Virus record (IMG/VR): IMGVR_UViG_3300032268_000986
Location: 248,001 to 312,000 of that record
Reading direction: 5' to 3' (one strand)
Length of the DNA stretch: 64,000 nucleotides
In this document: positions 10,637 through 57,861 of the stretch, piece after piece
How positions within the stretch are numbered: position 1 is the stretch's first letter
Layout: each line of letters opens with the position of its first letter
Made by a program: the position numbers and the translations under genes
The notes under the pieces: model-generated
Told to the model about the DNA's origin: nothing
Seen by the model: only the letters and a program-made list of their open reading frames with translations
Databases searched by the model: none

Positions 10637-11578
10637 TTATGTTTCCAGTGAATACTTAATTATGCCGCTGCGAACACTGTGTTCAACAACCAAGTTGTGC
10701 TGTGGCTTGACCAAGATAACAGGGTTTTCCCCAGGTCCCCAGTGTCCGGTGTCCAGGTAAAGTTTGTCTGAATCTTGTTGCATGCCCATGCGAGGCACAA
10801 CCAACACTGTTTTATCACGCCAGTTGTCAGTGGGTATTTCAAGCACCAACGAACGTGTGTCTTTGTTCCAGGTCATGACACAGTAACTGGCCACACAGGT
10901 GCCTGCTTGTACTGCTCGCATGTATGGAATCCAATTCCAAATAGTGGAAACTTCTCGATCAAATTGCATAATGCCATTGGTTAGTTCTATTGGCGGTGTG
11001 GGCAAGAACGTACAATCGTATGTTTTACATAATAATTCATTTACTGTGCGCACAAACTCCGAATCAATATCTACTCCTGGATTGAATATCCTGTTGACTT
11101 CTTCTTGTTGTTGTATGCCACATGCAAAACTATCTGGAACTTCTACTGCCCACATTTCTAAAAAATACTTGCCGGGTAAAAACGTAGATTTTTCATCACG
11201 TGGCAAACTATTCCACAATCCTTCCCACCACAAGTTGCCATTCACAGTCTCTGTAAATGTAATAGGCGTGGGCTGATAGTTGTGATCATAACGTTCATTG
11301 ATCAACTCAATTCGATCTGCCAGTTTTAATTGTTTAATAATTTCGCAACCAAGTTGATAACGATCATGGTCAATTTCGAATGCACGAATATGTCTGGCAC
11401 CATGTTTTAGTGCCAACATTGATAACAATCCTGTGCCAAACCCAATGTCGGTACAGTGTTGATTGGCCACATAACGAGAGAGAATTCTCTCGTAAAATTG
11501 ATTGCGAACAAAGTCATTGATCATGTTGAGGTTAACACCATCGTGTTGATACCAATCAATCTTGTTTAAAAAATCCAT
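10637..11578 (-). CDS. SAM-dependent methyltransferase, PRMT-like; start probably MDFL at 11578
   Basis: MIND..RN..Y, DIGFGTGLLS.LA..HGA, E-x8-E loop (ETVNGNLWWE), late TGHW motif; TAATG coupling to the upstream ORF. Confidence 0.75.
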   Translation of the reverse strand: MDFLNKIDWYQHDGVNLNMINDFVRNQFYERILSRYVANQHCTDIGFGTGLLSMLALKHGARHIRAFEIDHDRYQLGCEIIKQLKLADRIELINERYDHNYQPTPITFTETVNGNLWWEGLWNSLPRDEKSTFLPGKYFLEMWAVEVPDSFACGIQQQEEVNRIFNPGVDIDSEFVRTVNELLCKTYDCTFLPTPPIELTNGIMQFDREVSTIWNWIPYMRAVQAGTCVASYCVMTWNKDTRSLVLEIPTDNWRDKTVLVVPRMGMQQDSDKLYLDTGHWGPGENPVILVKPQHNLVVEHSVRSGIIKYSLET

Positions 11579-11769
11579 TACCAGTGCCTTATTGTGTTTG
11601 CCATGATAAACAAACATGTGATCACATGCAGTATCACCCAGAATGTTTTTAAAAACAATGCTATTCGGGCTTCGCGTAGTGTCAAGATAGGCACATCGGG
11701 CCTATCACTGTCAGACTTGCCCATCAAATGACCAGTGGCTCTGGCCCAGATTCGTTCAATACTGTTCAT
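11578..11769 (-). CDS. small membrane protein (63 aa); start probably MNSIE at 11769
   Basis: Hydrophobic C-terminal helix; stop overlaps the next ATG. Confidence 0.65.
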   Translation of the reverse strand: MNSIERIWARATGHLMGKSDSDRPDVPILTLREARIALFLKTFWVILHVITCLFIMANTIRHW

Positions 11770-11773
11770 GTGT

Positions 11774-12094
11774 TTATATTCTAAAACTTTCGCCGCAACC
11801 ACATCGGTCGCGTTCATTGGGATTGACAAATTCAAATCCTTCGTTTAAACCATTGCGCACATAGTCCACTTGCATGCCGTCAAGATACACATGGCTTTTG
11901 GGATCCACAAACAGTTTACACTGTGCGGAATCAATACAGATGTCATCGGGGGCAGGAGTATCTACATATTCTAACACATAAGCCAGGCCCGAGCAACCAG
12001 TGGTTCTAACGCCCAGACGTATGCCAAGCCCGCGACCTCGTTTGCTCAGTACTCGTGTGACCTGAGATTCAGCTGCGGGAGTCAGCGTTATCAT
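11774..12094 (-). CDS. iscA: A-type Fe-S carrier protein IscA
   Basis: [16 protein letters not shown] and C-terminal RCGCGESF. Confidence 0.92.
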
Positions 12095-12402
12095 ACGCCA
12101 AAACTGCTGCCGCAGCCACAGGTGGTAGTGGCGTTGGGATTGTTGATAACAAACTGACTGCCATTTAGGTCGTCTTTGAAATCTACCATGGCCCCGGCCA
12201 GGTACTGCATGCTCATGGCATCGGCTAGAACACCATCAATTTCAAAGTCGTCTTCGTTTTTGACTTCATCAAATGTGAATCCATACTGGAATCCTGAACA
12301 TCCACCGCCCTGCACAAACACTCGGACTTTTAGATTGGGATTGTTTTCTTCAACCAAGAGGTCAGAGATTTTTGATTTTGCTGATTCAGTTATGGTTATC
12401 AT
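12091..12402 (-). CDS. erpA: A-type Fe-S carrier protein ErpA/HesB-like
   Basis: [20 protein letters not shown] and TCGCGSSF. Confidence 0.9.
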
Positions 12403-12778
12403 GTTTTTCTCGGTAATCTTTTACAGCCGCCTTTATGGCATCTTCGGCCAGTATTGAGCAGTGTATCTTCACTGGCGGTAATGCTAGTTCTTCGGCGATT
12501 TGGGAGTTTTTGATGGCGCCTGCTTGGTCAAGTGTTTTTCCTTTGACCCATTCTGTAACAAGGCTGCTTGACGCAATCGCCGATCCGCAGCCATACGTTT
12601 TGAAGCGAGCATCTGTAATAATACCTGTATCATCATCTACCTTTATTTGTAGTTTCATAACATCGCCACAGGCTGGAGCACCCACCATGCCGGTGCCTAT
12701 GTCTGTGTCGTCCTTGCCAAACGATCCCACATTGCGTGGATTCTCATAGTGATCAATAACTTTGTTAGAATAAGCCAT
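12386..12778 (-). CDS. iscU: Fe-S scaffold protein IscU
   Basis: [43 protein letters not shown]. Confidence 0.96.
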
Positions 12779-12804
12779 GTGATATTTCCTTGTTGATTAT
12801 AACA

Positions 12805-12810
12805 TATTTA
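12805..12810 (-). promoter_or_regulatory. TAAATA late-promoter-like motif upstream of iscU
   Basis: Motif in the short gap before iscU; same motif precedes virion genes. Confidence 0.5.
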
Positions 12811-12823
12811 CTGGGCCAATACA

Positions 12824-13525
12824 TTATTTGGTTATCCAGTCGCACAGTGTTTGTGCAATTAATTCATGGCCTAGCTCGTTTGGGTGGCCACAGGTCCGCA
12901 AATATGGGTTTGATGGACTGTCTAGATCATCCAAATAGTCTGTCATGTCTTTGTATCCAAATAGTTGCACACAAGATTTGTGGTATATCCTATCAGTGTT
13001 AACACCTGGTAAATTTAGATCAATATCACTCCATCCAACAATGTAATAATCTTGTATTTTGTACTGTTGACATATTGCCTGCATGCTCAATACGTTTTTG
13101 TGTAGATTAAAATCTACCCCAGAAATTGAACTAAAATATTTTGTATAACTCCGAGACGCTTCATCAGTTTGGCCAGACCTCAAATCAACCACCTTGAACC
13201 CAGCAAGGTCCTTGGAAACAGTGATGTGTTTATTTACATCAGGAATGGGACTGTATAAATCCAATAGCACACAGTCTCTTGCCGGAGTAGTAATTAAAAA
13301 AACTGCCATTGAATTTTCCACATCTACATCGGTGCGCCGAACATAGTCCAGCAGTTGCAATACTGATCTGCTGTTGCTGGATCCGTTTATACCCAAATTG
13401 GTAAAATTGGTAGTGGATAATTTAACAGCCAGGCGTGCTCCAAATGTATCTGTTGGCAGAACTCCGGCACCTGCGGTCCAGCTGCATCCAAACACTGCCA
13501 ATGCAGGCATGGTCACAACTTGCAA
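12824..13525 (-). CDS. SGNH/GDSL-like hydrolase or acyltransferase
   Basis: VFGCSWTAG, N.GINGSSN, GHPNELGH blocks. Confidence 0.75.
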   Translation of the reverse strand: MQVVTMPALAVFGCSWTAGAGVLPTDTFGARLAVKLSTTNFTNLGINGSSNSRSVLQLLDYVRRTDVDVENSMAVFLITTPARDCVLLDLYSPIPDVNKHITVSKDLAGFKVVDLRSGQTDEASRSYTKYFSSISGVDFNLHKNVLSMQAICQQYKIQDYYIVGWSDIDLNLPGVNTDRIYHKSCVQLFGYKDMTDYLDDLDSPSNPYLRTCGHPNELGHELIAQTLCDWITK

Positions 13526-18903: not shown

Positions 18904-18932
18904 AGTTTAACACAAAATTGTCAGTGTGTCAA
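18904..18932 (-). promoter_or_regulatory. sigma70-type promoter TTGACA-N17-TAAACT
   Basis: TTGACA cactgacaattttgtgt TAAACT. Confidence 0.7.
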
Positions 18933-20215
18933 CCGCGAACTTGGTAATATGATTCTTGGTCAGATTCGGACAACAGATCCCACAACCTTGAATTGTAATC
19001 TTTCATTTCAATTCGAGTACGGTTGTCAAAATCTGCTGCCATGGTGAGATATTCATTCCACAAACGGTTATTGTCCGGACTATCACCCAAGCAAAATGCA
19101 TGCAGTCCTTCGATAAAAGTTCTAAATGTGTTCCATCCTGGATTGTCTGACGCCTGTGCAATTTGCAATGCACGATTGCATCTTTGGGCTAGTTCAAGTC
19201 GACATCGTTTTGGCATGACTTCCACGGCTGCATATTCGGGCCAGTGCAAATACATGATGCTAAAGTCTGGTTGTTGGTTGTGAGTTTTACCCCATTGATC
19301 CCAGTATTCAGCAATGCTGTCAATGTAAAACACATTACTCACGCTGATAACCAAATTGATGTTGAAATCAAATTGACCCGGATTGGCCTTTTTCAGATCC
19401 AGAGCTTGTTGTACAGTGCGTTCTATTCTTTCAAAACGTGCTGGCCAACGCACATAGTGATAGTTTTCCCCAACACTGTCAATGCTGAAGTTCAAGAACA
19501 CTCGACGAAATTTAGGAATAGCATCCACAAACATTTGATTGATACTGGTGCCATTGGTCGTGGCACTGAGGATCACTCGTTGTGAAAAGTCTTCGCCTAG
19601 ACTGTCCAAGAACTCCATTAGTCGATCCAGTCCAGGCTGTATCATGGATTCTCCGCCAGTCAAATTGATTTCAACAAATCGGTACGTGTTCAACACATCC
19701 ACTAGATACTGTTTAACAGTTGACCATATCACAGGATCATCGGTGATGTCCTGAACAAAATGATCCAGTGCTGGCTGTTTTAATACATCGGCTAGTAGGC
19801 TGCTGAATTCTGGTTGGCAACTTCGGCAAGCAAGATTACAAAGATTACTGAATTTGATAGTGACTCTGTTGGAGTCAGTTTGAGGAGAAAATTCTAAATT
19901 ACTGCTGAGTGTATTAACTGAATCTCGCATGCGCTCTGACACACTGTTGTGCTGTTCGCTGTGAACACATACATGACACTGACTGTTGGTTTTTTGATCC
20001 AGTACATCTTGCTTGATCTCTTGAAACAATTCTGAGAAAGGGCGACCAAATTCCAAATCATTTTCGCGCCAATTGCAACAGGGAATTGCTCGCATGCCAC
20101 GACTGCCTTGCAGTAAGAAAAGATTCTGAAATGGCTTTGCGCAGGCGCTGGGATTCTGCTTGAGCCAAACTATTTTTTGGTCGTATAAGGATGCGGGGTC
20201 GTTGTTGATTGCCAT
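18929..20215 (-). CDS. radical SAM enzyme with N-terminal twitch/SPASM-like Cys cluster
   Basis: C.KPF...PCC and C..C at N-terminus; CNLACRSC; TGGE; TTNGT; SIDSVG..Y.YVRW. Confidence 0.88.
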   Translation of the reverse strand: MAINNDPASLYDQKIVWLKQNPSACAKPFQNLFLLQGSRGMRAIPCCNWRENDLEFGRPFSELFQEIKQDVLDQKTNSQCHVCVHSEQHNSVSERMRDSVNTLSSNLEFSPQTDSNRVTIKFSNLCNLACRSCQPEFSSLLADVLKQPALDHFVQDITDDPVIWSTVKQYLVDVLNTYRFVEINLTGGESMIQPGLDRLMEFLDSLGEDFSQRVILSATTNGTSINQMFVDAIPKFRRVFLNFSIDSVGENYHYVRWPARFERIERTVQQALDLKKANPGQFDFNINLVISVSNVFYIDSIAEYWDQWGKTHNQQPDFSIMYLHWPEYAAVEVMPKRCRLELAQRCNRALQIAQASDNPGWNTFRTFIEGLHAFCLGDSPDNNRLWNEYLTMAADFDNRTRIEMKDYNSRLWDLLSESDQESYYQVRG

Positions 20216-43648: not shown

Positions 43649-44179
43649 ATGCCATCAAGTAATAAAGAAGGTAAGTCAGTGATAAGAGAATGGGTTACAG
43701 AATTTGGTCCTGACGTAAAAACTGTACTAGATCTTGGAGTCGGGAACGGAACTTATCATAGGCTGTATACCAGGAAGTCGCCAGCTCTTAAAGAAGCATA
43801 CTGGATTGGCGTCGAGGCATGGGAGCCCTATATTCGTGAATTTGATTTGTTAACAAGATATAATAAGATTGTCAATGAAGATATTAGAACAGTAGATTTC
43901 AACACCTTGGGTCCAATCGATTTAGTGTTTGCAGGTGATGTATTGGAACATATAACCAAAGAAGAAGCAATTAAAGTAGTTGACAATCTATTAAAGGTTG
44001 CTAAGAAAATTATTGTTAGTATTCCTATTGTGCATTTTCCACAAGGCAAAGAAGAAGGAAATCCCTACGAAGCACATGTAAAGGATGATTGGTCACACAC
44101 AGAAATGTTGGAAACTTTCCCTCAAATTAAACGATCATGGACCGGTAACATCATTGGAGTGTACCTATTAGAGTTATGA
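43649..44179 (+). CDS. class I SAM-dependent methyltransferase
   Basis: VLDLGVGNG.Y, GVEAWE, GDVLEH. Confidence 0.85.
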   Translation: MPSSNKEGKSVIREWVTEFGPDVKTVLDLGVGNGTYHRLYTRKSPALKEAYWIGVEAWEPYIREFDLLTRYNKIVNEDIRTVDFNTLGPIDLVFAGDVLEHITKEEAIKVVDNLLKVAKKIIVSIPIVHFPQGKEEGNPYEAHVKDDWSHTEMLETFPQIKRSWTGNIIGVYLLEL

Positions 44180-45823: not shown

Positions 45824-46802
45824 CGTTGAGAATTCTCCAAGCAGTTCCGTCTCGCATTTCTGGTTCAGTAAATTGACAATAAGACAAGTGTGCAGCCCAG
45901 GCCACAACTTCATCCAACGTGGGAATCTTGGGGGTTTCAATTTCACTCAGTGATTGGCTGCACAAGGCTGCGGCAGCATTAGGACCCAGTGTGATTGCTG
46001 GTTTGCCCAGTAACAATGCTTCCCCGGCTGCAATACTGGAAAATGTAACCAAGCAATGTACATCTCGGTCTAGTGCCATTTCCATAGTATCGTCGTTTAC
46101 TCGTGTTGATCTACCTTGTTTAGTACGTATTACAATTTCTCGGTCAGTGTGTTGCTTGATTTCATTGATGGTGGAATCCAACCAAGATTCAAGATTGATG
46201 TTATACAGATTCAAGAGTTTTTGACTGGGAGGAGCCAACAACACCTTGGACCCGGGTCTGAATTTTGTCAACTGTATTCCGGTGCGTTCCAGTCTGTCAT
46301 GGGGCCTGTCTATGACTGGACCAAACTTTTGTACATCATTCAGTGTAACGCGATGAAACGTCTTCTTTTTGCCGTTGCCAAAATATCCAGTGTCAACGTA
46401 ATAAAAATCACGATTGGCTGCTCGGCAGGCTGCCATTTCTTTCCTTTTGCTAATACCACGCAACACACACGGTATCATGGAGTTAGCGTCCCGCTCCCAG
46501 CTACTGATTTGTCCGCCAGCTCCTTGCACAAAGCTCTGTAAAATAGGATCGTACATGTGCCCCTTTTCCTTGTATTTGACTTCGCCTGGATCTGACGCAA
46601 TTGCCACCACTGTTTGCAATGCAACGGCGTTGCAGGACTGATGTATCTTGGCCGCGGTTATTCCATAGTATGCGCCCGACGGATCCACACGGAACTTGAG
46701 GATATCTTCAAACAGTTGTCGCACATCTGGTGGCACCATGTCAAATGGCGACCTTGGCAATGGAGCCGGTTCTTGTTCTTGATCTTGATCTTGATCACTC
46801 AT
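45816..46802 (-). CDS. KpsS/KpsC-like GT-B protein with N-terminal extension
   Basis: YVDTGY, IVIRTK, HCLVTFSSIAAGEALLLGKP, WAAHLSYCQF. Confidence 0.6.
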   Translation of the reverse strand: MSDQDQDQEQEPAPLPRSPFDMVPPDVRQLFEDILKFRVDPSGAYYGITAAKIHQSCNAVALQTVVAIASDPGEVKYKEKGHMYDPILQSFVQGAGGQISSWERDANSMIPCVLRGISKRKEMAACRAANRDFYYVDTGYFGNGKKKTFHRVTLNDVQKFGPVIDRPHDRLERTGIQLTKFRPGSKVLLAPPSQKLLNLYNINLESWLDSTINEIKQHTDREIVIRTKQGRSTRVNDDTMEMALDRDVHCLVTFSSIAAGEALLLGKPAITLGPNAAAALCSQSLSEIETPKIPTLDEVVAWAAHLSYCQFTEPEMRDGTAWRILNGG

Positions 46803-47484
46803 GAGTTATTTGCTGACAATGCAGTGTGAGTTTGTGTTCTTGATGCCAGGCTTCATTCTGAGGAGTGTTGGCAAACTCATCAAAGCAGGGCGTTCCCAAG
46901 GTGTAGTGCAACAACTTGGCATTGGCATTGGGTCCAAACTCATCAGGTAACCAATTCCATTCTATTGGCAGTTCACCGATGCGTGAATCATCGATCCAAG
47001 AAAATCTGTGCAGTTCTGCTCCGGTGGCCTTCTGCACGTATTCAGGAGTTAGTTTTCGATTTGGAAAACTGTTGCAGTTCCAGAGAATTACACTGCTCCA
47101 ATTCTTGCGTGGGTAATCTTCGTTTTTGGCACCCAGGTACTTTGTTGGCATGCGTGTTTTATAGTTGTGTTTGACCACTTGCACATCCATGTAAGGATTT
47201 CTCATGTCCCAAAGTTCAGCAATGTCGCCACGCACAATCATGTCACCGTCGATAAAAATAGCCGAACCAGTAAATCCCATCAGGTAAGGTACTAGGAAAC
47301 GTGTGTAGATAAAGTGGTTGCTACCGTCGGTGTGTGTTTCGTCGTAATCTTTAAATAGATTAAGTGCCACTGGCACAATACTCACAGGACGACTTGCATT
47401 TCTAATAATACTGTTAACGCAGGTATGATATGCTATGGCCTCACGTGGATCATAGCCAATAAAAATTGGTATGATCTCTTTCAT
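46795..47484 (-). CDS. GT-A glycosyltransferase (GT8-related phage family)
   Basis: IFIGYDPRE, FIYTRFLVP, FIDGDM (DxD), YPRKNWSS, WNWL, LHYTLG.P. Confidence 0.8.
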   Translation of the reverse strand: MKEIIPIFIGYDPREAIAYHTCVNSIIRNASRPVSIVPVALNLFKDYDETHTDGSNHFIYTRFLVPYLMGFTGSAIFIDGDMIVRGDIAELWDMRNPYMDVQVVKHNYKTRMPTKYLGAKNEDYPRKNWSSVILWNCNSFPNRKLTPEYVQKATGAELHRFSWIDDSRIGELPIEWNWLPDEFGPNANAKLLHYTLGTPCFDEFANTPQNEAWHQEHKLTLHCQQITHE

Positions 47485-48245
47485 CGACGCTCAATGTCCT
47501 CTTCAACACAATCTTCACCGTATTGAATTTCAATTAGTCGCAAGGGCTTGTCAGTTTCGTTGCACAACTGGTGCCACTCGTTAAGTTTGATCCAAGTACT
47601 CTGATGACGGGCAGGACTGGCCATTAGATCACGATCAGTTGAGTGTGGATCCACGGTGTACACTGTGGCTTCACCTTCGGCCACAAACCAAAACTCAGCA
47701 CGTTTTTCATGCCGTTGCATGCTCAAGCATGTCTTGGGACTCACAGTGAGTTCTTTGAGTTTGACATGATTTCCAACTTCGTGCAACACACGATAATAGC
47801 CCCAGGCACGACTGGTACGGGGTTTTTTCCAGTCTTCAAGTATCCAGCTAGAACTATTTTTCTTGTCCGCACCGCCAACACCAAACGCAAATGTCAATTG
47901 ATCATCGACAACATCCATTTCTGGAATGTTCAGGTGTGTGCGATCACCACCATTGGCAAACACCAAGGTTGCGTCAGGGTAGTGTGCTCTGACTTGACGT
48001 ATGAACTCCTTGGCCGAACCATCAGCATCGTCAAATGTGTACACTTCGTCCACCATGGCAAGATTGTTTATCACACACAATCTTTCTGTCCAGGGCATGA
48101 ATGGGCGACCTTTTTTGCGTGTGAGCCATTCGTCTGAATTGAGTCCCACAATCAGCATGTCGCCTAGAGCGCGGGCAGCTTTGAAATACGCAATATGCCC
48201 AGAATGCAGCGGATCAAAGCCGCCAGTTACAAGTACAATTTTCAT
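47481..48245 (-). CDS. cytidylyltransferase (HxGH) fused to mannose-6-phosphate-isomerase-type cupin; start probably MKIVL at 48245
   Basis: TGGFDPLHSGH, GLNSD, FANGGDR; RAWGYY, LSMQRH..RAE.W.V, WHQL.N, IEIQ.G..C.E.DI.R. Confidence 0.88.
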   Translation of the reverse strand: MKIVLVTGGFDPLHSGHIAYFKAARALGDMLIVGLNSDEWLTRKKGRPFMPWTERLCVINNLAMVDEVYTFDDADGSAKEFIRQVRAHYPDATLVFANGGDRTHLNIPEMDVVDDQLTFAFGVGGADKKNSSSWILEDWKKPRTSRAWGYYRVLHEVGNHVKLKELTVSPKTCLSMQRHEKRAEFWFVAEGEATVYTVDPHSTDRDLMASPARHQSTWIKLNEWHQLCNETDKPLRLIEIQYGEDCVEEDIERR

Positions 48246-48960: not shown

Positions 48961-50015
48961 TATTCTTCCTCAACGTCAACAACAGGTGTGGCATCCTTTT
49001 GATTGCCAAAATCTTTCATCACAGTGTCAAGACAGCCGTCAGTATTGGCTTCCCATGCCTTGCGAAACTTCTTGATGATCTCGCCATCGCTTGTGGTAAA
49101 CACTAGACTGTTGCCTTCGCGTTTGAGCAGGCCTTTTTTCTCAATCAAGTCCACAAGACCTGAGTAAGGGCTCATGCCTGTTTCATAAGGAATCTTGACT
49201 TGCACTCCCTCGAACGGCTTGGCATAGCGTGTTTTCATTACTTTACAGCCAGCACGAATACCAGTTACATCTGAAATCTTGTTGCCGTCTTCGTCCTCTT
49301 TGAGTTTCATCTTCTTCATGGCCACCACAATTGAGCTGGCGTAAATGAAACCTTGACCACCTGAAATCTTGTCGTCTGGATCAAACATGTCTTGACTGGC
49401 GTATGTGTGATTGGTACAAACCAGGCCCACGTTGTAACTACCAAACATGTTGACACAGTTACGCACCAAGGCGGTAAGAGCTTTGGGCTTGCGACCTAGG
49501 TCACCTTTCATTTCGCCTGCATCAAATTGATTCACATCAGTGGGTGTCAGCAACATGCCCAGGCTGTCAATTACAAACATGACCTTGGGTCGCTCGGCAG
49601 GATCAAGAGCTTTGTAGTCGCTCATGAATGTAGAGATAGTTTTAGCTACATCGTCAATCATGGCCATTGACAATTTGAGTAACTTGCTGTCACTGGTATC
49701 AACTCCCAGGGCCTTGAGCCAGTCTTCGTCCAAGGCATTTTCGCTGTCAATCAACACTACAAAGATGCCTTGCTGTTGTGCATGTTTGATAATGTTGCCA
49801 CTACAGATGTAACTTTTACCTGCGCCCGAGTCACCGGCAAACACCGTGACCTTGCCCAAGGGGATACCTCGATCAAAGTCTCCTGAGATCAAGTAGTTCA
49901 AAGCATAGTTGCCTGTGGAGATCCAGTCTGTGGGATCATTGAATCCAATCGACAATCCGTCGATACTTTTTGTAATTTCCTTGCGGAATTTTGATACGTC
50001 AAATGGTTTAGCCAT
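48960..50015 (-). CDS. uvsX: RecA/UvsX recombinase
   Basis: STGNYALN, GDSGAGKS, IDSEN, VIDSLG, TNHTY, SGG.G..YASS. Confidence 0.95.
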   Translation of the reverse strand: MAKPFDVSKFRKEITKSIDGLSIGFNDPTDWISTGNYALNYLISGDFDRGIPLGKVTVFAGDSGAGKSYICSGNIIKHAQQQGIFVVLIDSENALDEDWLKALGVDTSDSKLLKLSMAMIDDVAKTISTFMSDYKALDPAERPKVMFVIDSLGMLLTPTDVNQFDAGEMKGDLGRKPKALTALVRNCVNMFGSYNVGLVCTNHTYASQDMFDPDDKISGGQGFIYASSIVVAMKKMKLKEDEDGNKISDVTGIRAGCKVMKTRYAKPFEGVQVKIPYETGMSPYSGLVDLIEKKGLLKREGNSLVFTTSDGEIIKKFRKAWEANTDGCLDTVMKDFGNQKDATPVVDVEEE

Positions 50016-51606
50016 GGTATTTTCCTTTGTAAATGATATCTGCTATTTCTGGATGTGTCTGATTAAATTTTTGATCTCTTATATTGTCTAATTTTAGCAT
50101 GAATTTTGATAGTTCGTCAATTAAATCTGGTGAATATTTGTTCTGTTTGAGTAAGGCAATGATAGGAAATACATTGTGTTTTATTAACTTGTCATGATCA
50201 ATTTGAGATAATTTGTCAATGACTTGAGTTGTTAATTCCGTATTCATTGCTGTTATGCTTAAAAATTTTGGGTGTTCTAATAAATTAAAATTTAATTTGT
50301 TAAATTTTTTTGTATCTACCCAGGTTATTAACTGATCAAGATAATAAACATTTTGAACATTAACTGTGGTAAAAATACTAAGGATCATGTTTGGTAGTTT
50401 GTTTTCTAAGAATTTATCTAAGTTAACATTGACCAAATCCCATTTCCCCCCGCGCTCTAATTCAAACCGTGTACCTATGTTATCTATGCTAAATGCAATG
50501 TCAACTTGTCGGAACAACTTCCATTTTTCAAACAAATGTGCTGGGTACACAGACCCGTTTGAATTGTAATGTAGTCTAATTTTGTGTGCCAGGTCATGCT
50601 CTATTAGATAATCTAAAAATGTCTCTTGTTGCTTGATGAGAAACGGCTCGCCACCATAAAAATCAATGTTAACCAGCTGATTTCCCAACGTGTTAAACAT
50701 TTTCCAAATTTGATCATTTTTGACCCACTGTCCTTTTCGATTGAGATTTTTGAGATCAATAATAGAGTCAAAGTGTCGTGCCTGTTCTTCTGCTATTTTT
50801 GAACTAGCGTCTGAATTGCATATTCTGCATGCAAAATTACAAAGATTTCCTAGTTTTAAATCTAGACTAACTAAATTTTCAAGTTGATCTTGCTCTATGT
50901 CTAAACATTGCGCATCAATCCCAAGACAATCACTGAACCACTGTCGATTTGATTGCCCTTTATGTTGTTCTTTCATCCAGCAGCTCGAACATCCGGCAGG
51001 ACGATCCCCGTCGAGAAATTGTGTTCTTAACCTTGTTAAATAGTCACTGTGGTAGACTTCTTCAATACTATTAGTATTGATATTGTAGGGAACATTGTTG
51101 GAATCCGTTATTGATTCTTTATACACACAACAAGGTCTAAATTCGCCTTGTGACGAAATTTCTAAATGTGCCCATGGACTAAAACAAAATGTGTCAGGCA
51201 AGGTAATTGCAGGATTCTTAACAACCTCAGGTGCGACGTCACTAAATTTTATGTCCAGTGTTGAAAAAATACAATCATCTGTTGAATAGTTGCGTCTAAC
51301 TAATTCAAGATGATCTTGATCAATGTCAGAACCAGAACTACAAATTAAAATAAAAAAGTTAGATATATCTAACAGCGTTGCGCTTTTTTGTATGTGTATT
51401 AAAGTTTCAACTGATATCAAATTTCTACTGTACAGAACTATTCGACTATGATCACTGTATTCTGGTTGGTACCATTGTTTAAATAATTTATACAGTGTTT
51501 TTCGAGGTTGACCAAGTAATTGATCTAGGTCGATTACACCAACTATTTGATAGTTGTAATGTTGTTCTAAATACTGTTTTAGGTCAGTTGAGGGTATCGG
51601 TGTCAT
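50008..51606 (-). CDS. radical SAM enzyme with twitch-like Cys cluster and extra N-terminal domain; AT-rich gene
   Basis: CFSPW.HL.I...G..RPCC, C.SCW, CNFACRIC, YGGEPF, YNSNG, FSIDNIG. Confidence 0.9.
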   Translation of the reverse strand: MTPIPSTDLKQYLEQHYNYQIVGVIDLDQLLGQPRKTLYKLFKQWYQPEYSDHSRIVLYSRNLISVETLIHIQKSATLLDISNFFILICSSGSDIDQDHLELVRRNYSTDDCIFSTLDIKFSDVAPEVVKNPAITLPDTFCFSPWAHLEISSQGEFRPCCVYKESITDSNNVPYNINTNSIEEVYHSDYLTRLRTQFLDGDRPAGCSSCWMKEQHKGQSNRQWFSDCLGIDAQCLDIEQDQLENLVSLDLKLGNLCNFACRICNSDASSKIAEEQARHFDSIIDLKNLNRKGQWVKNDQIWKMFNTLGNQLVNIDFYGGEPFLIKQQETFLDYLIEHDLAHKIRLHYNSNGSVYPAHLFEKWKLFRQVDIAFSIDNIGTRFELERGGKWDLVNVNLDKFLENKLPNMILSIFTTVNVQNVYYLDQLITWVDTKKFNKLNFNLLEHPKFLSITAMNTELTTQVIDKLSQIDHDKLIKHNVFPIIALLKQNKYSPDLIDELSKFMLKLDNIRDQKFNQTHPEIADIIYKGKYHG

Positions 51607-52667: not shown

Positions 52668-52685
52668 AGTATGTTTCCTTTATAA

Positions 52686-54581: not shown

Positions 54582-56168
54582 GCGCATTATGGAAATAAAG
54601 GGCATGGGTTCAACTATGACATCGCCATGATCTTTGAGGTGACTGTCCAATTCAGAGTGATAGGTTTGCAACAACATCAACATGCGCACTGCCAACAAAC
54701 TGCTCATCACAAGATCATCAGTTTCCCCGGGTTTGGCAGAGTAACTGGTGCCAGCTGCCACAAAGGTCTTGAGCTCAGAAATCAAGGGCTTGCTGTACAG
54801 TTTCATGCGGCCCGATTCCACAAGGATTTTGAACTTGTTGCAGGCTGTGATCTTGGCCTTGTGTGTGGTGTTGAAACCTTTGCGGAATCTGCGACCTGTG
54901 GTGCCTGTCACAGAGTTGTCGCTGAGAAAGTACCCAGGAATATTTTCTTCACCGTATTCTGCAATAGAGATCAAGGCTGCTTCTCCCAGGGTGTTGTTTT
55001 CCACCGAGTAATACACGCTCTTGTCGTTCTTGGTCACTGCTTTTATTTCCTTGATGATGTCCACCAGTATGCGAACTTGACTGGGCACATCAGTTTTGTT
55101 GTGGCGCCACTCGGCTACTTGTTCTGTGGTGTCGGCCTCAAAAACCTGTATAGCTGCTGGATCACCTCCGGTGCCCAGGCTGGGATCCAAGGCAACAATG
55201 TACATTTTACCTGGGTTGATTGGCTTGTACCAGCGCACTTGACCGGTACGGTGTATGGGGTCAACTCCTTCTATCTCCAGCAGTTTGATAGGGGATATCA
55301 AAGTTTCATCGTTGATAACAAACTCACAGTCCATTTCTCTGCGGAAACGTTCTTCACCCAGCTGAGCTCGTTGTTCATTGGCCCAGGCATCATCACGATC
55401 TGGGTGTTCTCTCCAATAGGCGCGGTACGCACGGAAGCCATTGATGCCTAGACCGTCGGGTCTGGGATTGCCGTACTCGTCTTCAATCTTGTTGGCACCT
55501 TTCCAGATATAAGCAAATTGATCTTCGTCTGAGTTGGGAGTTGATGTGATAATGGCTTTACCACCAGTGCTCAATGTGGGAGTGATGGAAGTCCAAAACT
55601 CCTTGGCAATTGTGGGTCGCACAAACGCAAACTCATCAAGATACAGCAAGGTGATACTCATACCACGGCCGGTGTTTTCAGTTGTGGTCTGACTTACAAT
55701 ACGGCTACCGTTGTCAAACTCTAGGCTTCCTTTGTTGTAGCTGGTGGCGCCGGCACGAATGTGATTGGGGCACAACTCATAAGCATATCTTATGCGTTGC
55801 ATGATTTCCTGGGCGCCTAGATACTTGTGTGCAGCAATCAAGATTGTGCTGTCGGGAATAAACATGGCATACCACAGCAGGTATCCAGCTGCTGATGTTG
55901 ATTTGCCTGTTTGTCGAGGCATGAGACTGATACTAAATCTATTGGTGTGATAGTTGTCAATCAGCTTTTTTTGATAGTCATAAGCATGGTACAACATCTT
56001 GCCACGTGTGGGATGCTGAATGTGAAAAAAGTTGTCCATGAAGTATGCCGGGCCCGTGACAGGGTCGGCGCACAGTGCAAATTCTTGTAGTTCTTGATTG
56101 GTGTAGGTCTCTCGTCTGTGTGGCGATTTGACCAGTACAGTGTCCAGTGTTGGTTTCATTCCAATCAT
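54579..56168 (-). CDS. terL: terminase large subunit (T4 gp17-like)
   Basis: PRQTGKST, RGMSITLLYLDEFAFV, IITSTPN, ALDPSLG.G.D, DDLVM. Confidence 0.96.
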   Translation of the reverse strand: MIGMKPTLDTVLVKSPHRRETYTNQELQEFALCADPVTGPAYFMDNFFHIQHPTRGKMLYHAYDYQKKLIDNYHTNRFSISLMPRQTGKSTSAAGYLLWYAMFIPDSTILIAAHKYLGAQEIMQRIRYAYELCPNHIRAGATSYNKGSLEFDNGSRIVSQTTTENTGRGMSITLLYLDEFAFVRPTIAKEFWTSITPTLSTGGKAIITSTPNSDEDQFAYIWKGANKIEDEYGNPRPDGLGINGFRAYRAYWREHPDRDDAWANEQRAQLGEERFRREMDCEFVINDETLISPIKLLEIEGVDPIHRTGQVRWYKPINPGKMYIVALDPSLGTGGDPAAIQVFEADTTEQVAEWRHNKTDVPSQVRILVDIIKEIKAVTKNDKSVYYSVENNTLGEAALISIAEYGEENIPGYFLSDNSVTGTTGRRFRKGFNTTHKAKITACNKFKILVESGRMKLYSKPLISELKTFVAAGTSYSAKPGETDDLVMSSLLAVRMLMLLQTYHSELDSHLKDHGDVIVEPMPFISIMR

Positions 56169-56749
56169 GTGATATTGGGCTTTAATAATGTGTACGAGGT
56201 CAGTCTAAATGTGCCCACAGGCACAGGGTTGAGCATGCCATGAAACAAGCCAGTGGTTTCAGCATTGTTTAAAGGGTTGGTCATTATGTATCCTGTGTTG
56301 GCCTGAGATTCAAACTGTTTTCTCACTTGCTGGCCTTGACTGTCATGATAAAAACAGGTGCCCTGTTCAGAATGGCCTATCCAATACATCTGCATGGCGC
56401 CCGGCAACGCACCGTCGGTATGTATAGGGCAATCAAACCCTTCATGATCCAACCAAAACACAGTATGTCCATGATGATGACTGAGTAAAGGCATGTTGAT
56501 CATGGTGCTGATACGAAACCATATCTGTTGTTGATTGGTTGTCCATTGGTCTCCCCAGGACAGATCATGAAGTTCAATTCTGCGTCGAGGCCAGGTTTCT
56601 TGGCAAGGTTGAGTACTGTGTGGGACATTCAACCAGTCCGTGGCAAGTATTTGTTGCAAAAGATCTGAGGGCACCAGGTCAGTTACCTGGAACAGATTTG
56701 GAACACTGTCAACTGCGGTTATTTGCATAGGTGTGATAACTCTGGCCAT
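56165..56749 (-). CDS. 2OG-Fe(II) oxygenase-like protein
   Basis: HTD...FHG...R facial triad and 2OG-binding Arg pattern. Confidence 0.7.
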   Translation of the reverse strand: MARVITPMQITAVDSVPNLFQVTDLVPSDLLQQILATDWLNVPHSTQPCQETWPRRRIELHDLSWGDQWTTNQQQIWFRISTMINMPLLSHHHGHTVFWLDHEGFDCPIHTDGALPGAMQMYWIGHSEQGTCFYHDSQGQQVRKQFESQANTGYIMTNPLNNAETTGLFHGMLNPVPVGTFRLTSYTLLKPNIT

Positions 56750-57861
56750 AGCTTTTCAAACTCACCTGCTTTGTCAGGATGGAACACAGTTTCGTTGTCC
56801 ACTATGTGTTGTTTGAATTGTTTTTCAATTCCAGGTCGGGCCTGTTTTATGTCACGATACATATTTAATGAGTTATCAAAAAATGCACGTTCAGCCGGAG
56901 TGGAGATCCCTAGATTGTAAAAACGTTCTATCTCAGAAATTGCTGCGGCTGCAACTTCTGGACCATGCAGAAATGGATCAAGATACTCTGGTTGAAACAG
57001 GTTCTGCCACAACACTGTGGTACCAGTTTGCTCGGCAAATTCGCGCAGTTCACAAATGCGTGTGGCATTGTAGATGTTGTACACTGCATGTATGCCACCC
57101 CACTGTCCTTGCGTTTTCATCAAGTCCTTGATCAGTTGCAAGTTGTGTTGAATTGTGCTCCAGGTGGCACCATGTCGCACATATTCAAGGCGATCACCGG
57201 TGTTATCAAAGCTCATGCTCCAGCCCACTTTGTTTCTAGTTGATAACTTTTGAAATATCTTGTTTGATTCTAGATCAACATTCAAGTTTGTAATCAGTGT
57301 GACAATTGCGTCCTTGGGTATGACATCCAACAAACGATTGTTTTCTGGCAACAACAAGGGCTCGCCGCCTACCAGCGCAACTTCATGTATGTGTTCGTAG
57401 TGCTGTTCAATGAAGTCACACACTGAATCGTAGTAGGGTCTTGCACCACTCTTGAATGGAATACCTTTGATGCCGGCCCATTTTGAGCTGCATGATTCAC
57501 CGCAGTAGTTACAACTCAGGTTACAAGTGGTATTCCAACGCACATCCACAATCACAGGATAGTGATATTTGTCTCCTGCTGTGGCATAATCAAAGTTGGG
57601 ATTTACATTGTTGTGCCAGGCCCGTTCAGAATCAGCACCAAATCGTTCTGCTCGCACACAATTGCTGCAATACTCATGTGGGATTCCTTGTGCAAGACTA
57701 TTGCGTATCTTGCCCATGAGATCAGAGTTTAAAATCTCAACAATGCTCTGTGAGTTCAAGTTGCCCAGCATGTTGGGATTGCCGGCACAGCAGGTTTTTA
57801 CATCGCCCCTGGGATTGATATGTAGGCCGCGCCAGGGAGCGGCACAATAGAAATTTGTCAT
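56719..57861 (-). CDS. radical SAM enzyme with N-terminal twitch-like Cys cluster
   Basis: CAAPW.GLHI.P.G.V.TCC, CSNC, CNLSCNYC, VGGEPL, ITN, SFDN.G.R.EYVRHG. Confidence 0.92.
   Translation of the reverse strand: MTNFYCAAPWRGLHINPRGDVKTCCAGNPNMLGNLNSQSIVEILNSDLMGKIRNSLAQGIPHEYCSNCVRAERFGADSERAWHNNVNPNFDYATAGDKYHYPVIVDVRWNTTCNLSCNYCGESCSSKWAGIKGIPFKSGARPYYDSVCDFIEQHYEHIHEVALVGGEPLLLPENNRLLDVIPKDAIVTLITNLNVDLESNKIFQKLSTRNKVGWSMSFDNTGDRLEYVRHGATWSTIQHNLQLIKDLMKTQGQWGGIHAVYNIYNATRICELREFAEQTGTTVLWQNLFQPEYLDPFLHGPEVAAAAISEIERFYNLGISTPAERAFFDNSLNMYRDIKQARPGIEKQFKQHIVDNETVFHPDKAGEFEKLWPELSHLCK

What the first reader, a model, noticed from the sequence alone, without database searches (positions are those of the whole stretch)
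10637..57861. Candidate late-expressed virion-decoration system: phage Fe-S assembly + four radical SAM enzymes + glycosyltransferase cluster
Seen in sequence: IscU/ErpA/IscA, four radical SAM enzymes, three SGNH-like proteins, a 2OG-Fe(II) oxygenase, three methyltransferases, eight glycosyltransferase-like genes and a cytidylyltransferase-cupin. The TAAATA motif found before virion genes also sits before iscU (12805), both arms of the glycosyltransferase cluster (41370 +, 48251 -) and the 57861 radical SAM gene; a TAAATC variant precedes the 20215 one. Established: radical SAM enzymes need 4Fe-4S clusters, and T4 late promoters are TATAAATA. Inference: one distributed pathway builds and chemically tailors a glycan late in infection, most plausibly on virion proteins (or the host envelope), with its own Fe-S supply. 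DNA modification would be expected earlier. I know of no characterised phage system like this.
Basis: partly seen in the sequence, partly recalled or inferred. Interest (0 to 1): 0.85.

Follow-up and report, generated by a model that had tools for sequence, protein, structure and literature searches.

The report
Jumbo-phage late glycan-tailoring gene set
An uncultured freshwater jumbo phage carries a conserved sugar-chain-building gene island, four related iron-sulfur "radical SAM" enzymes and its own iron-sulfur cluster helpers. Part of this set sits behind late-type promoters, but what gets decorated (virus particle, phage DNA or host surface) is still open.

Summary
The window comes from a 343-kb IMG/VR jumbo phage, distantly related to PA5oct and Atu_ph07. 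IscU, ErpA and IscA are genuine. All four radical SAM proteins are paralogues of one uncharacterised family (NCBIfam N_Twi_rSAM, with an N-terminal twitch domain). The 8.4-kb sugar island (39817-48245) holds a nucleotidyltransferase-cupin, GT8, GT25, a weak GT2, two methyltransferases and four paralogues with the fold of retaining beta-Kdo transferases (KpsC/WbbB).

TAAATA is a real upstream element: 16 of 79 genes carry it, against 1-4 for control hexamers. In relatives it is conserved before virion-like genes, before radical SAM #4 and before both arms of the island.

The 47-kb span is not one late unit. It is the replication, recombination and packaging region with these genes scattered through it. 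Radical SAM #2 lies in a sigma70-type (early) UvsW operon. iscU has a sigma70-type promoter overlapping TAAATA.

The radical SAM-to-glycosyltransferase link has independent support: adjacency in relatives, glycan-gene neighbours of cellular homologues, and an interleaved cluster in cultured Vibrio phage K566 behind a canonical TATAAATA.

The target remains undecided. Late DNA glycosylation is now known, so late timing does not exclude DNA. Phage Fe-S genes alongside many radical SAM genes were already reported in 2017.

The parts
12386..12778 (-). iscU, Fe-S scaffold
   Evidence: Pfam NifU_N at 1e-54. TIGR01999 at 223 bits against a cutoff of 192. Cys37, Cys63, Cys106 and LPPVK are present. 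More than 600 viral contigs carry copies at 84-91% identity.
12091..12402 (-). erpA, A-type Fe-S carrier
   Evidence: NF010147 at 154 bits against a cutoff of 117. The C...CGCG motif is present. Only a few relatives have it.
11774..12094 (-). iscA, A-type Fe-S carrier
   Evidence: TIGR02011 at 150.3 bits against a cutoff of 150.6. It follows iscU in most relatives.
12796..12810 (-). Overlapping promoter-like elements before iscU: TAAATA (12810-12805) directly followed by the extended -10 TGTTATAAT (12804-12796)
   Evidence: Relatives show TTGACA/TTGACT-17-TATAAT/TATACT at the same distance in 12 of 70 unique upstream regions, often with TAAATA in the spacer.
18929..20215 (-). Radical SAM #1 (N_Twi_rSAM paralogue)
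   Evidence: NF033640 at 188 bits against a cutoff of 170. TAAATC lies at 20226-20221, 5 nt before the ATG. In relatives it sits beside iscU-iscA (L113, L136).
34554..35612 (-). Radical SAM #2 (N_Twi_rSAM paralogue), inside the UvsW operon
   Evidence: NF033640 at 199 bits. It overlaps the upstream gene. The operon promoter is TTGACT (37870-37865), a 17-nt spacer, then TATAAT (37847-37842). The gene is missing from this slot in most relatives.
50008..51606 (-). Radical SAM #3 (N_Twi_rSAM paralogue with an extra 137-aa N-terminus)
   Evidence: NF033640 at 314 bits. The gene has low GC, 0.373. It follows the SSB terminator hairpin at 51652-51628 and has no TAAATA.
56719..57861 (-). Radical SAM #4 (N_Twi_rSAM paralogue)
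   Evidence: NF033640 at 206 bits. At least 118 viral contigs carry copies at 72-100% identity. TAAATA at 57871-57866 is conserved in 43 of 51 relatives.
56165..56749 (-). Fe(II)/2-oxoglutarate oxygenase, overlapping and always following radical SAM #4
   Evidence: AlphaFold pLDDT 85. Foldseek matches HalD, PolD, LH3, P4H and OGFOD1 from E = 3e-6. H-x-D...H and an Arg are invariant. The gene pairing with radical SAM #4 is conserved.
47481..48245 (-). First gene of the minus arm: nucleotidyltransferase (RfaE domain II / TagD-like) fused to a ManC-type cupin
   Evidence: TAAATA at 48256-48251 lies 5 nt before the ATG and is conserved in 42 of 55 relatives. The N-terminal domain is 50-56% identical to genes of cyanomyoviruses S-SSM7 and P-TIM68.
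46795..47484 (-). GT8-family glycosyltransferase
   Evidence: Pfam PF01501 at 3.5e-7.
45816..46802 (-). beta-Kdo-transferase-like GT paralogue (no HP motif)
   Evidence: Homologues occur fused to GT8.
44879..45823 (-). beta-Kdo-transferase-like GT paralogue (RPHP motif present)
44176..44877 (+). GT25-family glycosyltransferase
   Evidence: Pfam PF01755 at 3.6e-17.
43649..44179 (+). Class I SAM methyltransferase (MT11/MT25)
42971..43621 (+). FkbM-family methyltransferase
   Evidence: PF05050 at 9e-21. Gene call taken.
42178..42978 (+). beta-Kdo-transferase-like GT paralogue (the modelled one)
   Evidence: AlphaFold pLDDT 89. The top 23 PDB hits, apart from one, are KpsC, WbbB or KrkA, from E = 3e-6 at probability 1.0. 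Relatives match DUF6716, 'putative glycosyltransferase'. Viral structural relatives include Tetraselmis virus 1 capsule-synthesis-like proteins and a CcrColossus protein.
41381..42181 (+). First gene of the plus arm: weak GT2-like
   Evidence: PF00535 at 22.5 bits against a cutoff of 23.3. TAAATA at 41370-41375 lies 5 nt before the ATG. In relatives it is TAAATA in 10 of 28 and TAAGTA in 10 of 28.
40521..41369 (-). beta-Kdo-transferase-like GT paralogue (RPHP motif present)
39817..40554 (-). 245-aa ORF with a DxD-like motif; glycosyltransferase status unverified
   Evidence: No Pfam or PDB hit. It is conserved at the end of the island in relatives.
10637..11617 (-). Weak methyltransferase-like ORF between iscA and nrdB
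   Evidence: PrmA at E = 0.006; RsmD and PrmA models at low scores.
12824..13525 (-). SGNH-like ORF (GCS motif), between nrdA and iscU
   Evidence: Motif only. No profile hit.
28636..29349 (-). SGNH-like ORF (GDS motif)
   Evidence: Motif only. No profile hit.
33399..34121 (-). SGNH-like ORF (GCS motif)
   Evidence: Motif only. No profile hit.

Best explanation
Shown. The window is the replication, recombination and packaging part of an uncultured 343-kb freshwater jumbo phage. It contains a clade-conserved but compositionally variable sugar island: a nucleotidyltransferase-cupin, GT8, GT25, a GT2-like gene, four KpsC/WbbB-like transferases and two methyltransferases. All of its products are soluble. 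Both divergent arms of the island begin 5 nt after a conserved TAAATA element. The same element precedes virion-like genes and the operon of radical SAM #4 plus the 2OG oxygenase. The four radical SAM proteins are paralogues of one family, each with a radical SAM [4Fe-4S] motif and an N-terminal twitch-type Cys cluster.

Inferred. The island activates a sugar (NT-cupin) and builds a short methylated glycan in the cytoplasm late in infection. This glycan possibly contains an ulosonic acid. The twitch radical SAM enzymes and the 2OG oxygenase tailor either the sugars or the acceptor. IscU, ErpA and IscA, working with host IscS, raise the capacity to load about eight [4Fe-4S] clusters. They are expressed from early-type as well as late-type signals, so clusters are ready in time. 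The acceptor is a phage-made macromolecule. I rank virion protein first (about 0.35-0.4), phage DNA second and a host envelope lipid or glycan third. The set is a loose functional network, not one co-regulated 47-kb unit. Radical SAM #2 is early, and the radical SAM paralogues and the isc cassette move around between relatives.
For: Family assignments.

TAAATA: enrichment; association with virion-like genes; conservation in relatives against diverged flanks, and even where the island is inverted.

Link between the radical SAM family and glycosyltransferases:
- An N_Twi paralogue lies within 3 kb upstream of the NT-cupin gene in 14 of 47 relatives.
- Cellular homologues have GT1, GT2, epimerase or carbamoyltransferase genes within 8 kb in 29 of 79 loci, PhyH dioxygenases in 10 loci, and often 2-6 tandem paralogues.
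- Cultured Vibrio phage K566 has radical SAM, GT8, radical SAM, radical SAM and a GT4-like gene on one strand, and radical SAM and GT8 on the other. The minus-strand operon starts 38 nt after a canonical TATAAATA.

Link between Fe-S genes and radical SAM genes:
- The radical SAM genes are the only Cys-rich Fe-S candidates in the window. The PD-(D/E)XK nuclease has 3 Cys.
- The order iscU-iscA-radical SAM #1 occurs in relatives.
- The same pairing was reported in marine T4-like genomes (PMC5332604).

Cytoplasmic assembly: the window has no flippase, polymerase or ABC transporter, and island proteins have no transmembrane segments.
Against: - No expression data exist. 'Late' rests on resemblance to the T4 motif and on which genes carry it. 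The full TATAAATA occurs once in the window. No gp55/gp33 homologue was looked for outside the window.
- Radical SAM #2 is in a sigma70-type operon. Radical SAM #3 has no recognisable promoter.
- iscU carries sigma70-type signals.
- Cultured phages with N_Twi-like radical SAM genes have no IscU.
- Two cellular homologues inspected in detail have no glycan genes nearby.
- No acceptor was identified. The island lies among DNA-metabolism genes, not next to capsid or tail genes.
- Catalytic residues of the KpsC-like proteins could not be mapped. Two of the four lack the HP motif.
Confidence: 0.45

Rival explanations
1. The island and the tailoring enzymes hypermodify phage DNA. Sugars are transferred onto a hydroxylated or hydroxymethylated base in replicated DNA shortly before packaging, as protection against host nucleases.
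For: - The island lies between UvsX/SSB/TerL and the clamp-loader-like AAA/UvsW genes.
- Published work places such group transfers late, 'leading up to packaging' (PMC13326640).
- GT-A enzymes related to WaaJ/WaaO (GT8) glycosylate 5hmC in phage DNA and are found next to terminase, clamp and helicase genes (10.1101/2023.12.21.572611).
- The variable content of the island fits an arms race.
- All enzymes are soluble.
Against: - The window holds no thymidylate-synthase homologue, C5-cytosine methyltransferase, TET/5mYOX, dCTPase or dNMP kinase.
- The 2OG oxygenase matches prolyl/lysyl hydroxylases and sugar-nucleoside oxygenases. No TET/JBP structure is among its top 50 hits.
- The methyltransferases are FkbM and MT11 types, not DNA methyltransferases.
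- KpsC-like transferases are known only on lipid or glycan acceptors (established knowledge).
- The other 280 kb of the genome could not be inspected.
Confidence: 0.22
2. The glycan is built on a host envelope molecule (lipid A-core, a phosphatidylglycerol-Kdo linker, or O-antigen/capsule). This would change the cell surface during infection, for superinfection exclusion or to stop progeny sticking to debris, as proposed for cyanophage LPS-like gene clusters.
For: - GT8, GT25 and KpsC/WbbB-like folds and an RfaE-like nucleotidyltransferase are typical LPS and capsule families.
- The nucleotidyltransferase domain is shared with cyanomyoviruses that carry such clusters.
- Host exporters could take over a lipid-linked product (inference).
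Against: - The window has no flippase, polymerase, transporter or priming transferase, and the island has no membrane segments.
- Late-type promoters leave little time for a surface change to matter (inference).
- The island is conserved in a strictly lytic-looking jumbo-phage backbone.
Confidence: 0.12
3. There is no system. The isc genes, the four radical SAM genes, the sugar island and the SGNH-like genes are independent accessory genes that happen to lie in one variable genome arm. The isc genes serve general host or phage Fe-S demand. The radical SAM paralogues do something unrelated to sugars, for example peptide or cofactor chemistry.
For: - The genes are scattered among core replication genes and have different promoter types.
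- The isc cassette and the radical SAM paralogues change position between relatives.
- isc genes sit between nrdA and nrdB here.
- Cultured phages with N_Twi-like radical SAM genes lack IscU.
- Some cellular homologues have no glycan context.
- SPASM/twitch enzymes are often peptide maturases (weak NCBIfam hits).
Against: - Radical SAM and GT genes are repeatedly adjacent in three independent settings: clade relatives, cellular genomes and Vibrio phage K566.
- The radical SAM #4 plus 2OG oxygenase pair is conserved.
- The same conserved promoter element precedes radical SAM #4 and both island arms.
Confidence: 0.2

Closest known systems
Fe-S assembly genes with many radical SAM genes in marine T4-like environmental viral genomes (Nishimura et al. 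2017, PMC5332604)
   Same: Viral IscU and/or A-type carriers occur together with multiple radical SAM genes, up to 12 in one 183-kb genome. That study made the same inference, that the phage supplies clusters for its own Fe-S enzymes.
   Different: This phage is a freshwater jumbo phage of the PA5oct/Atu_ph07 supergroup. IscU, ErpA and IscA occur together here. The radical SAM genes are shown to be one family (N_Twi) and linked to a glycosyltransferase island. No Cas4-type Fe-S nuclease is present.
Mycobacteriophage virion glycosylation (Freeman et al. 2023, cited in PMC12619734; details from my own knowledge)
   Same: Phage-encoded glycosyltransferases and methyltransferases decorate capsid and tail-tube proteins.
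   Different: In those phages the genes lie next to the structural genes, and no radical SAM, 2OG oxygenase, KpsC-like GT or Fe-S genes are involved. Here the island lies in the DNA-metabolism region, and glycosylation of virions is untested.
Phage DNA glycosylation pathways (Pyle et al., 10.1101/2023.12.21.572611; Lee et al. 2026, PMC13326640)
   Same: They combine several GTs (GT-A/GT8-like and GT-B), sugar-nucleotide synthesis genes and sometimes a 2OG dioxygenase. They sit close to replication and packaging genes and act late on DNA.
   Different: The defining base-activating enzymes (a ThyA homologue, or C5-MT plus TET) are not in this window. The oxygenase here is not TET-like. Radical SAM enzymes and KpsC-like GTs are not part of the described pathways.
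Retaining beta-Kdo transferases KpsC/KpsS (GT107), WbbB (GT99) and KrkA
   Same: They are the best fold matches, E = 3e-6 at probability 1.0. They are also the only, weak, PDB profile hit, and it covers the HP motif and the T-x-N-S...E-A segment.
   Different: Sequence identity is 10-13% and TM-score about 0.5. Two of the four paralogues lack HP. No CMP-Kdo synthetase (KdsB type) is present. The phage nucleotidyltransferase belongs to the RfaE/TagD class. Donor and acceptor are unknown.
Giant-virus glycan machinery (chloroviruses, Mimivirus; review PMC9614988), including Tetraselmis virus 1 'capsule polysaccharide biosynthesis' proteins
   Same: These are virus-encoded cytoplasmic GTs and methyltransferases that decorate virions. 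TetV-1 has four proteins with the same KpsC-like fold. Viral prolyl and lysyl hydroxylases are among the structural matches of the 2OG oxygenase.
   Different: These are eukaryotic viruses with no homologous gene order and no radical SAM or Fe-S component.
Radical SAM / GT8 cluster of cultured KVP40-like Vibrio phage K566 (OZ196521)
   Same: Four N-terminal-SPASM or radical SAM genes are interleaved with GT8 and GT4-like genes. A canonical T4 late promoter, TATAAATA, lies before one operon.
   Different: Identity is only 21-23%. K566 has no IscU, no KpsC-like GT and no NT-cupin, and its cluster is uncharacterised.

Membership tests
NCBIfam NF033640 N_Twi_rSAM (twitch domain-containing radical SAM protein) | Whole-protein score above the curated cutoff (170 bits), covering the full model | tested here: met
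   Scores are 188, 199, 314 and 206 bits over model positions 2-396/398.
NCBIfam NF033640 N_Twi_rSAM (twitch domain-containing radical SAM protein) | CxxxCxxC radical SAM motif plus an N-terminal Cys cluster (twitch/SPASM-like) ahead of the core | tested here: met
   C113, C117 and C120, plus C6, C24, C25 and C65, are invariant in all four. The Pfam SPASM hit is N-terminal to Radical_SAM. The N-terminal part aligns to the BtrN twitch region.
IscU scaffold (TIGR01999) | Equivalog score above cutoff; three cluster-ligand Cys and the LPPVK chaperone motif | tested here: met
   223 bits against 192. The PACGD, YGCGS, LPPVK and HCS segments are present.
A-type carriers ErpA / IscA | Equivalog score above cutoff; C-x(n)-C-G-C motif | tested here: met
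   ErpA scores 154 against 117. IscA scores 150.3 against 150.6, marginally below. The CGCG motif was seen in ErpA.
Complete ISC machinery | Cysteine desulfurase IscS, HscA/HscB chaperones and ferredoxin | tested here: not met
   None was found in the window. The phage supplies only the scaffold and carriers.
T4-type late promoter | TATAAATA at -10, with no -35 element | tested here: inconclusive
   Only the six-base core TAAATA is shared. The full octamer occurs once in the window. The core is strongly enriched upstream of genes and conserved in relatives.
T4-type late promoter | Drives virion structural genes | tested here: met
   It lies before 52808-54568 and 20593-21513 (PHROG 'virion structural protein'), 30354-31427 (baseplate-like) and 16267-18099 (pectate-lyase-like).
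T4-type late promoter | Dependence on gp55/gp33/sliding clamp, and late timing | not testable with these tools
   No expression data exist. The rest of the genome is not available. The PA5oct study reports only sigma70-type promoters.
Retaining beta-Kdo glycosyltransferases (GT99/GT107) | Characteristic two-Rossmann fold | tested here: met
   Foldseek matches KpsC, WbbB and KrkA at E = 3e-6 to 2e-3 and probability at least 0.97.
Retaining beta-Kdo glycosyltransferases (GT99/GT107) | HP motif and catalytic Asp nucleophile | tested here: inconclusive
   RPHP is present in 2 of 4 paralogues and aligns to the WbbB RAHPG segment. The Asp could not be mapped.
Retaining beta-Kdo glycosyltransferases (GT99/GT107) | CMP-beta-Kdo as donor | not testable with these tools
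   This needs enzymology.
Fe(II)/2OG-dependent oxygenase | DSBH fold with the H-x-D/E...H triad and a 2OG-binding Arg/Lys | tested here: met
   There is no Pfam or PDB sequence hit, and the profile comparison with the cellular PhyH neighbours was negative.
SGNH/GDSL hydrolase | Blocks I (GDS), II (G), III (GxN) and V (DxxH); profile match | tested here: inconclusive
   A block I-like G(D/C)S and a C-terminal GHH/GHP are present. There is no Pfam, NCBIfam or PDB-profile hit.
Phage DNA glycosylation pathway | A base-activating enzyme (ThyA-type hydroxymethylase or hydroxylase, or C5-MT plus TET/5mYOX) encoded with the GTs | tested here: not met
   None was found in the 64-kb window. The rest of the genome was not available.
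Mycobacteriophage-type virion glycosylation | GT/MT operon adjacent to capsid and tail genes; glycans detected on capsid and tail-tube proteins | tested here: not met
   For adjacency, the island lies between UvsX and the AAA/UvsW genes. Glycan detection is not testable here.

The most novel reading that the evidence does not exclude
N-terminal-twitch radical SAM enzymes, a partner 2OG oxygenase and KpsC-like transferases make a radical-SAM-tailored glycan, possibly containing an ulosonic acid. This glycan is attached late in infection to virion proteins of an abundant freshwater jumbo-phage clade, and a related version exists in KVP40-like vibriophages. The phage boosts Fe-S cluster delivery to run the pathway. 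This would be the first radical-SAM-dependent glycan pathway in a virus and the first function for the N_Twi_rSAM family.
Probability: 0.3. Interest if true: 0.8.

Novelty: new variant of a known kind. Interest (0 to 1): 0.6.

Why it matters
The N_Twi radical SAM family and the phage KpsC-like transferases have no known function, as far as these searches show, yet both are very common in freshwater viral contigs. At least 118 contigs carry radical SAM #4, more than 600 carry IscU or the NT-cupin, and more than 3600 proteins belong to the KpsC-like family. Linking these enzymes to a late-expressed sugar island gives a concrete hypothesis. The cluster in cultured Vibrio phage K566 makes that hypothesis testable at the bench. 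It also gives a physiological reason for the long-noted viral Fe-S 'auxiliary' genes. If the product coats virions or DNA, it bears on phage recognition by hosts, grazers and defence systems.

Tried and rejected
- Megablast of the region against cultured phages found nothing. tblastn with radical SAM #4 found nothing.
- PDB sequence searches gave only noise for the KpsC-like family with four sequences, the 194-aa oxygenase, the SGNH-like profile, the 245-aa ORF and the GT2-like ORF.
- hhalign of the 194-aa family against the PhyH neighbours of cellular homologues was negative.
- Profile search with the four radical SAM paralogues returned only close orthologues of radical SAM #4, so it gave no cellular context. 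One exact-sequence look-up failed on start-codon choice.
- I tested whether the PD-(D/E)XK nuclease next to the isc genes in relatives is a Cas4-type Fe-S client. I rejected this because it has only 3 Cys.
- I tested whether TAAATA before the AAA gene (39230) is functional. I rejected this because it is not conserved (1 of 24), whereas TGCTATAAT is.
- Phyletic profiling of isc genes against radical SAM and GT genes over whole genomes was not possible.
- The PA5oct omics paper gave no late-promoter motif to compare.
- Rfam and tRNA scans of the window were empty.

Full report
**What the window is**

The window matches IMG/VR contig IMGVR_UViG_3300032268_000986 (342,865 bp) at 100%. It has no near match among cultured phages. 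Its large terminase is 52% identical to that of PA5oct-like Pseudomonas jumbo phages, about 50% to Atu_ph07 and Phosso, and 45% to GAP32. It is therefore an uncultured jumbo phage of the T4-distant PA5oct/Atu_ph07/Rak2-like supergroup. Hundreds of related contigs come from the same metagenome collections.

Almost all genes lie on the minus strand.
- nrdB at 9536-10636 and nrdA at 13513-15834
- a DnaB-like helicase at 27200-28642 and a Toprim protein at 29330-30316
- a UvsW-like helicase at 36365-37834 and an AAA protein at 38182-39204
- a RecA/UvsX homologue at 48960-50015 and a gp32-like SSB at 51666-52667
- TerL at 54579-56168 and DNA ligase at 1293-2666

The genes of interest are scattered through this backbone.

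**Checking the observation**

The Fe-S genes are genuine IscU, ErpA and IscA, with the ligand motifs intact. No IscS, HscAB or ferredoxin is present, so the phage supplies only the scaffold and carriers.

All four radical SAM proteins pass the curated cutoff of a single NCBIfam subfamily, NF033640 'twitch domain-containing radical SAM protein'. They score 188, 199, 314 and 206 bits against a cutoff of 170. They are paralogues at 22-26% identity. The CxxxCxxC motif and four N-terminal Cys are invariant. The auxiliary-cluster domain lies before the radical SAM core, not after it. No member of this family has a solved structure; the nearest PDB sequences are generic SPASM/twitch enzymes such as BtrN and SkfB.

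The sugar island spans 39817-48245.
- Minus arm: nucleotidyltransferase-cupin, GT8 and two members of a four-member paralogue family.
- Plus arm: a weak GT2, another member of that family, an FkbM methyltransferase, an MT11 methyltransferase and GT25.
- Beyond the divergent point: the fourth paralogue and a 245-aa ORF.

The paralogue family has no Pfam hit here, but relatives match DUF6716 'putative glycosyltransferase', and some are fused to GT8. An AlphaFold model (pLDDT 89) finds the retaining beta-Kdo transferases KpsC, WbbB and KrkA as its best PDB matches (E = 3e-6, probability 1.0, TM about 0.5). A 30-sequence profile finds WbbB as its only, weak, PDB hit, across the HP and T-x-N-S...E-A motifs. 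Two of the four paralogues keep RPHP and two have a deletion there.

The 194-aa ORF that overlaps the end of radical SAM #4 has a DSBH Fe(II)/2OG oxygenase fold with an invariant H-x-D...H triad. It follows radical SAM #4 in all relatives examined.

The three SGNH-like ORFs rest on short motifs only. The 245-aa ORF and the GT2-like gene remain weak.

**The TAAATA motif**

The total count (34) is unremarkable. However, 16 of 79 genes have TAAATA within 40 nt upstream on the coding strand. Composition-matched hexamers that do not overlap it score 1-4. Carriers include PHROG 'virion structural protein' genes (52808-54568, 20593-21513), a baseplate-like gene and a pectate-lyase-like gene.

The motif survives in related contigs where the flanking sequence has diverged.

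| Gene | Unique upstream regions with TAAATA |
|---|---|
| vir586 (52808-54568) | 28 of 28 |
| u202 (62295-62903) | 28 of 28 |
| u162 (62924-63412) | 23 of 26 |
| radical SAM #4 | 43 of 51 |
| NT-cupin | 42 of 55, plus 3 TAAGTA |
| GT2 arm | 10 of 28, plus 10 TAAGTA |
| terL, SSB, recA, u150 | 0 |
| AAA gene | 1 of 24 |

The AAA gene has a conserved TGCTATAAT instead. For the NT-cupin the motif persists even in lineages where the island is inverted and the upstream sequence is unrelated. TAAATA is therefore a real, position-specific element. It resembles the core of the T4 late promoter TATAAATA (established knowledge), and it marks the virion-like genes, radical SAM #4 with its oxygenase, and both island arms.

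**Where 'all late' fails**

- Upstream of iscU, TAAATA is immediately followed by an extended -10, TGTTATAAT. In relatives, 12 of 70 unique iscU upstream regions carry TTGACA/TTGACT-17-TATAAT/TATACT at a fixed distance, often with TAAATA inside the spacer. The other gene sets have 0-2. This looks like overlapping early and late signals.
- Radical SAM #2 overlaps its upstream gene. It is the fourth gene behind TTGACT-17-TATAAT, just after a terminator upstream of UvsW.
- Radical SAM #3 follows the SSB terminator and has no TAAATA. It also has markedly lower GC than its surroundings (0.373).
- Radical SAM #1 has the TAAATC variant 5 nt before its ATG. It could also be read through from the TAAATA at 21537.
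- Strong sigma70-type promoters also precede SSB and occur three times in tandem at 39250-39813.

**Are the parts functionally linked?**

Radical SAM and GT genes are linked in three independent settings.
1. In relatives the island keeps its place between recA-u84-u150 and the AAA/UvsW genes, but it varies in content and orientation. An extra N_Twi paralogue lies within 3 kb upstream of the NT-cupin gene in 14 of 47 loci.
2. Cellular homologues occur in Bacteroidota, Bdellovibrionota and Hyphomicrobiales, often as 2-6 tandem paralogues. Their commonest neighbour families are GT1/GT4, PhyH dioxygenase, an ABC ATPase, carbamoyltransferase, NAD-epimerase/dehydratase and GT2. Of 79 loci, 29 have at least one glycan gene within 8 kb. 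Two loci inspected in detail do not.
3. The cultured KVP40-like Vibrio phage K566 has the order radical SAM, GT8, radical SAM, radical SAM, GT4-like on one strand. On the other strand it has radical SAM (with an N-terminal SPASM domain) and GT8. The minus-strand operon begins 38 nt after a canonical TATAAATA, the only one in 19 kb.

For Fe-S and radical SAM, the radical SAM proteins are the only clear Fe-S clients in the window. In relatives the isc cassette moves within a conserved backbone and in some sits directly beside radical SAM #1. The same pairing was described in marine T4-like genomes (PMC5332604). However, cultured phages with N_Twi-like enzymes have no IscU, so the pairing is facultative. 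A whole-genome phyletic test was not possible with the capped scans.

**What is the target?**

No island protein has a membrane segment, and the window has no flippase, polymerase or transporter. Assembly is therefore cytoplasmic, on a soluble or inner-leaflet acceptor.

Late-type promoters fit a virion protein, but they fit DNA equally well. Recent work places most DNA hypermodifying group transfers late, before packaging (PMC13326640). It also shows that GT-A/GT8-like enzymes next to terminase, clamp and helicase genes glycosylate DNA (10.1101/2023.12.21.572611).

Against DNA, the window has no ThyA homologue, C5-methyltransferase or TET-type enzyme. The oxygenase resembles prolyl/lysyl hydroxylases and sugar-nucleoside oxygenases, not TET/JBP. 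The remaining 280 kb could not be read. The KpsC-like fold also occurs four times in the giant Tetraselmis virus 1 and in Caulobacter jumbo phages.

I rank virion protein first, DNA second and host envelope third, none with high confidence.

**Comparison with what is known, and novelty**

Three pieces have precedent:
- Viral Fe-S genes with many radical SAM genes (2017)
- Phage GT/MT operons that glycosylate virions (mycobacteriophages)
- Phage DNA glycosylation

As far as the searches show, these points are new:
- All the phage radical SAM genes here belong to one uncharacterised N-twitch family.
- That family is recurrently tied to glycosyltransferases in phages and cells.
- Phages carry KpsC/WbbB-like transferases. 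No paper in the library links KpsC-type enzymes to phages.
- The island and one radical SAM/oxygenase pair share a conserved late-type promoter element.

I rate this a new variant of a known kind, a virus-encoded glycan pathway. Interest is moderate to high because a cultured model (K566) makes it testable.

Noticed in passing
window 57862-57875, 48243-48262, 63413-63428, 20213-20230: Where TAAATA lies only 4-6 nt before the ATG, it is often set in a short palindrome whose arms co-vary between relatives (CCCG..CGGG, CCTG..CAGG, GCAGA..TCTGC). This applies to radical SAM #4, the NT-cupin, u162 and radical SAM #1. Of the upstream 27-mers of radical SAM #4 and u162, 43-62% fold at -4 kcal/mol or lower, against 0% for six other genes. 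Transcripts from these sites would be nearly leaderless. The layout recalls the T4 e/soc hairpins that allow translation only from late transcripts (that comparison is from my own knowledge).
   Followed up: partly
window 10637-15834; loci L087-L160: In this phage the isc cassette sits between nrdA and nrdB. In relatives it sits elsewhere in the same backbone (u120-[iscU-iscA]-(radical SAM #1)-PD-(D/E)XK-pectate lyase-u143-nrdA-nrdB). erpA is present in only a few relatives.
   Followed up: partly
window 52668-52717: The SSB upstream region carries a direct repeat, ATAGGCAAC twice, that is conserved across relatives. It may be an autoregulatory operator like the one for T4 gp32.
   Followed up: no
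window 39250-39813: Three tandem, near-identical strong sigma70-type promoters (TTGACC, 17 nt, TGnTATAAT) lie in a stretch with only tiny ORFs, between the sugar island and the AAA gene.
   Followed up: no
window 50001-52000: GC drops to 0.373 over the radical SAM #3 gene, against about 0.47 elsewhere. The slot between SSB and recA is filled variably in relatives, which suggests recent acquisition.
   Followed up: no
window 4058-4501; loci L165, L170, L182, L184, L197: A GGACT/AIG2-like gamma-glutamyl cyclotransferase gene lies 35 kb from the island here. In several relatives it sits right beside the 245-aa ORF at the island's end.
   Followed up: no
loci L191, L214, L217, L218, L221, L224, L225, L227, L237: The segment from the NT-cupin to the KpsC-like gene at the island's end is inverted relative to its flanks in some relatives. 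Numbers of KpsC-like, FkbM, MT11 and GT25 genes also differ between relatives, so the island behaves as a hypervariable locus.
   Followed up: partly
L440 (Vibrio phage K566, OZ196521, 161.5-171 kb): This cultured KVP40-like phage has four radical SAM genes interleaved with GT8 and GT4-like genes. A canonical TATAAATA lies 38 nt before one operon. These phages have no IscU.
   Followed up: partly
window 57880-58317 and 8043-9128: A staphylococcal-nuclease homologue and a YHYH-domain protein both begin with a hydrophobic, signal-like segment. The nuclease also has TAAATA 4 nt before its ATG, overlapping the stop codon of the upstream gene.
   Followed up: no
window 37960-38175 (minus strand): A small ORF of about 71 aa, visibly hydrophobic in the DNA read (probably a membrane protein), lies between the AAA gene and the terminator/promoter that precedes UvsW.
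   Followed up: no
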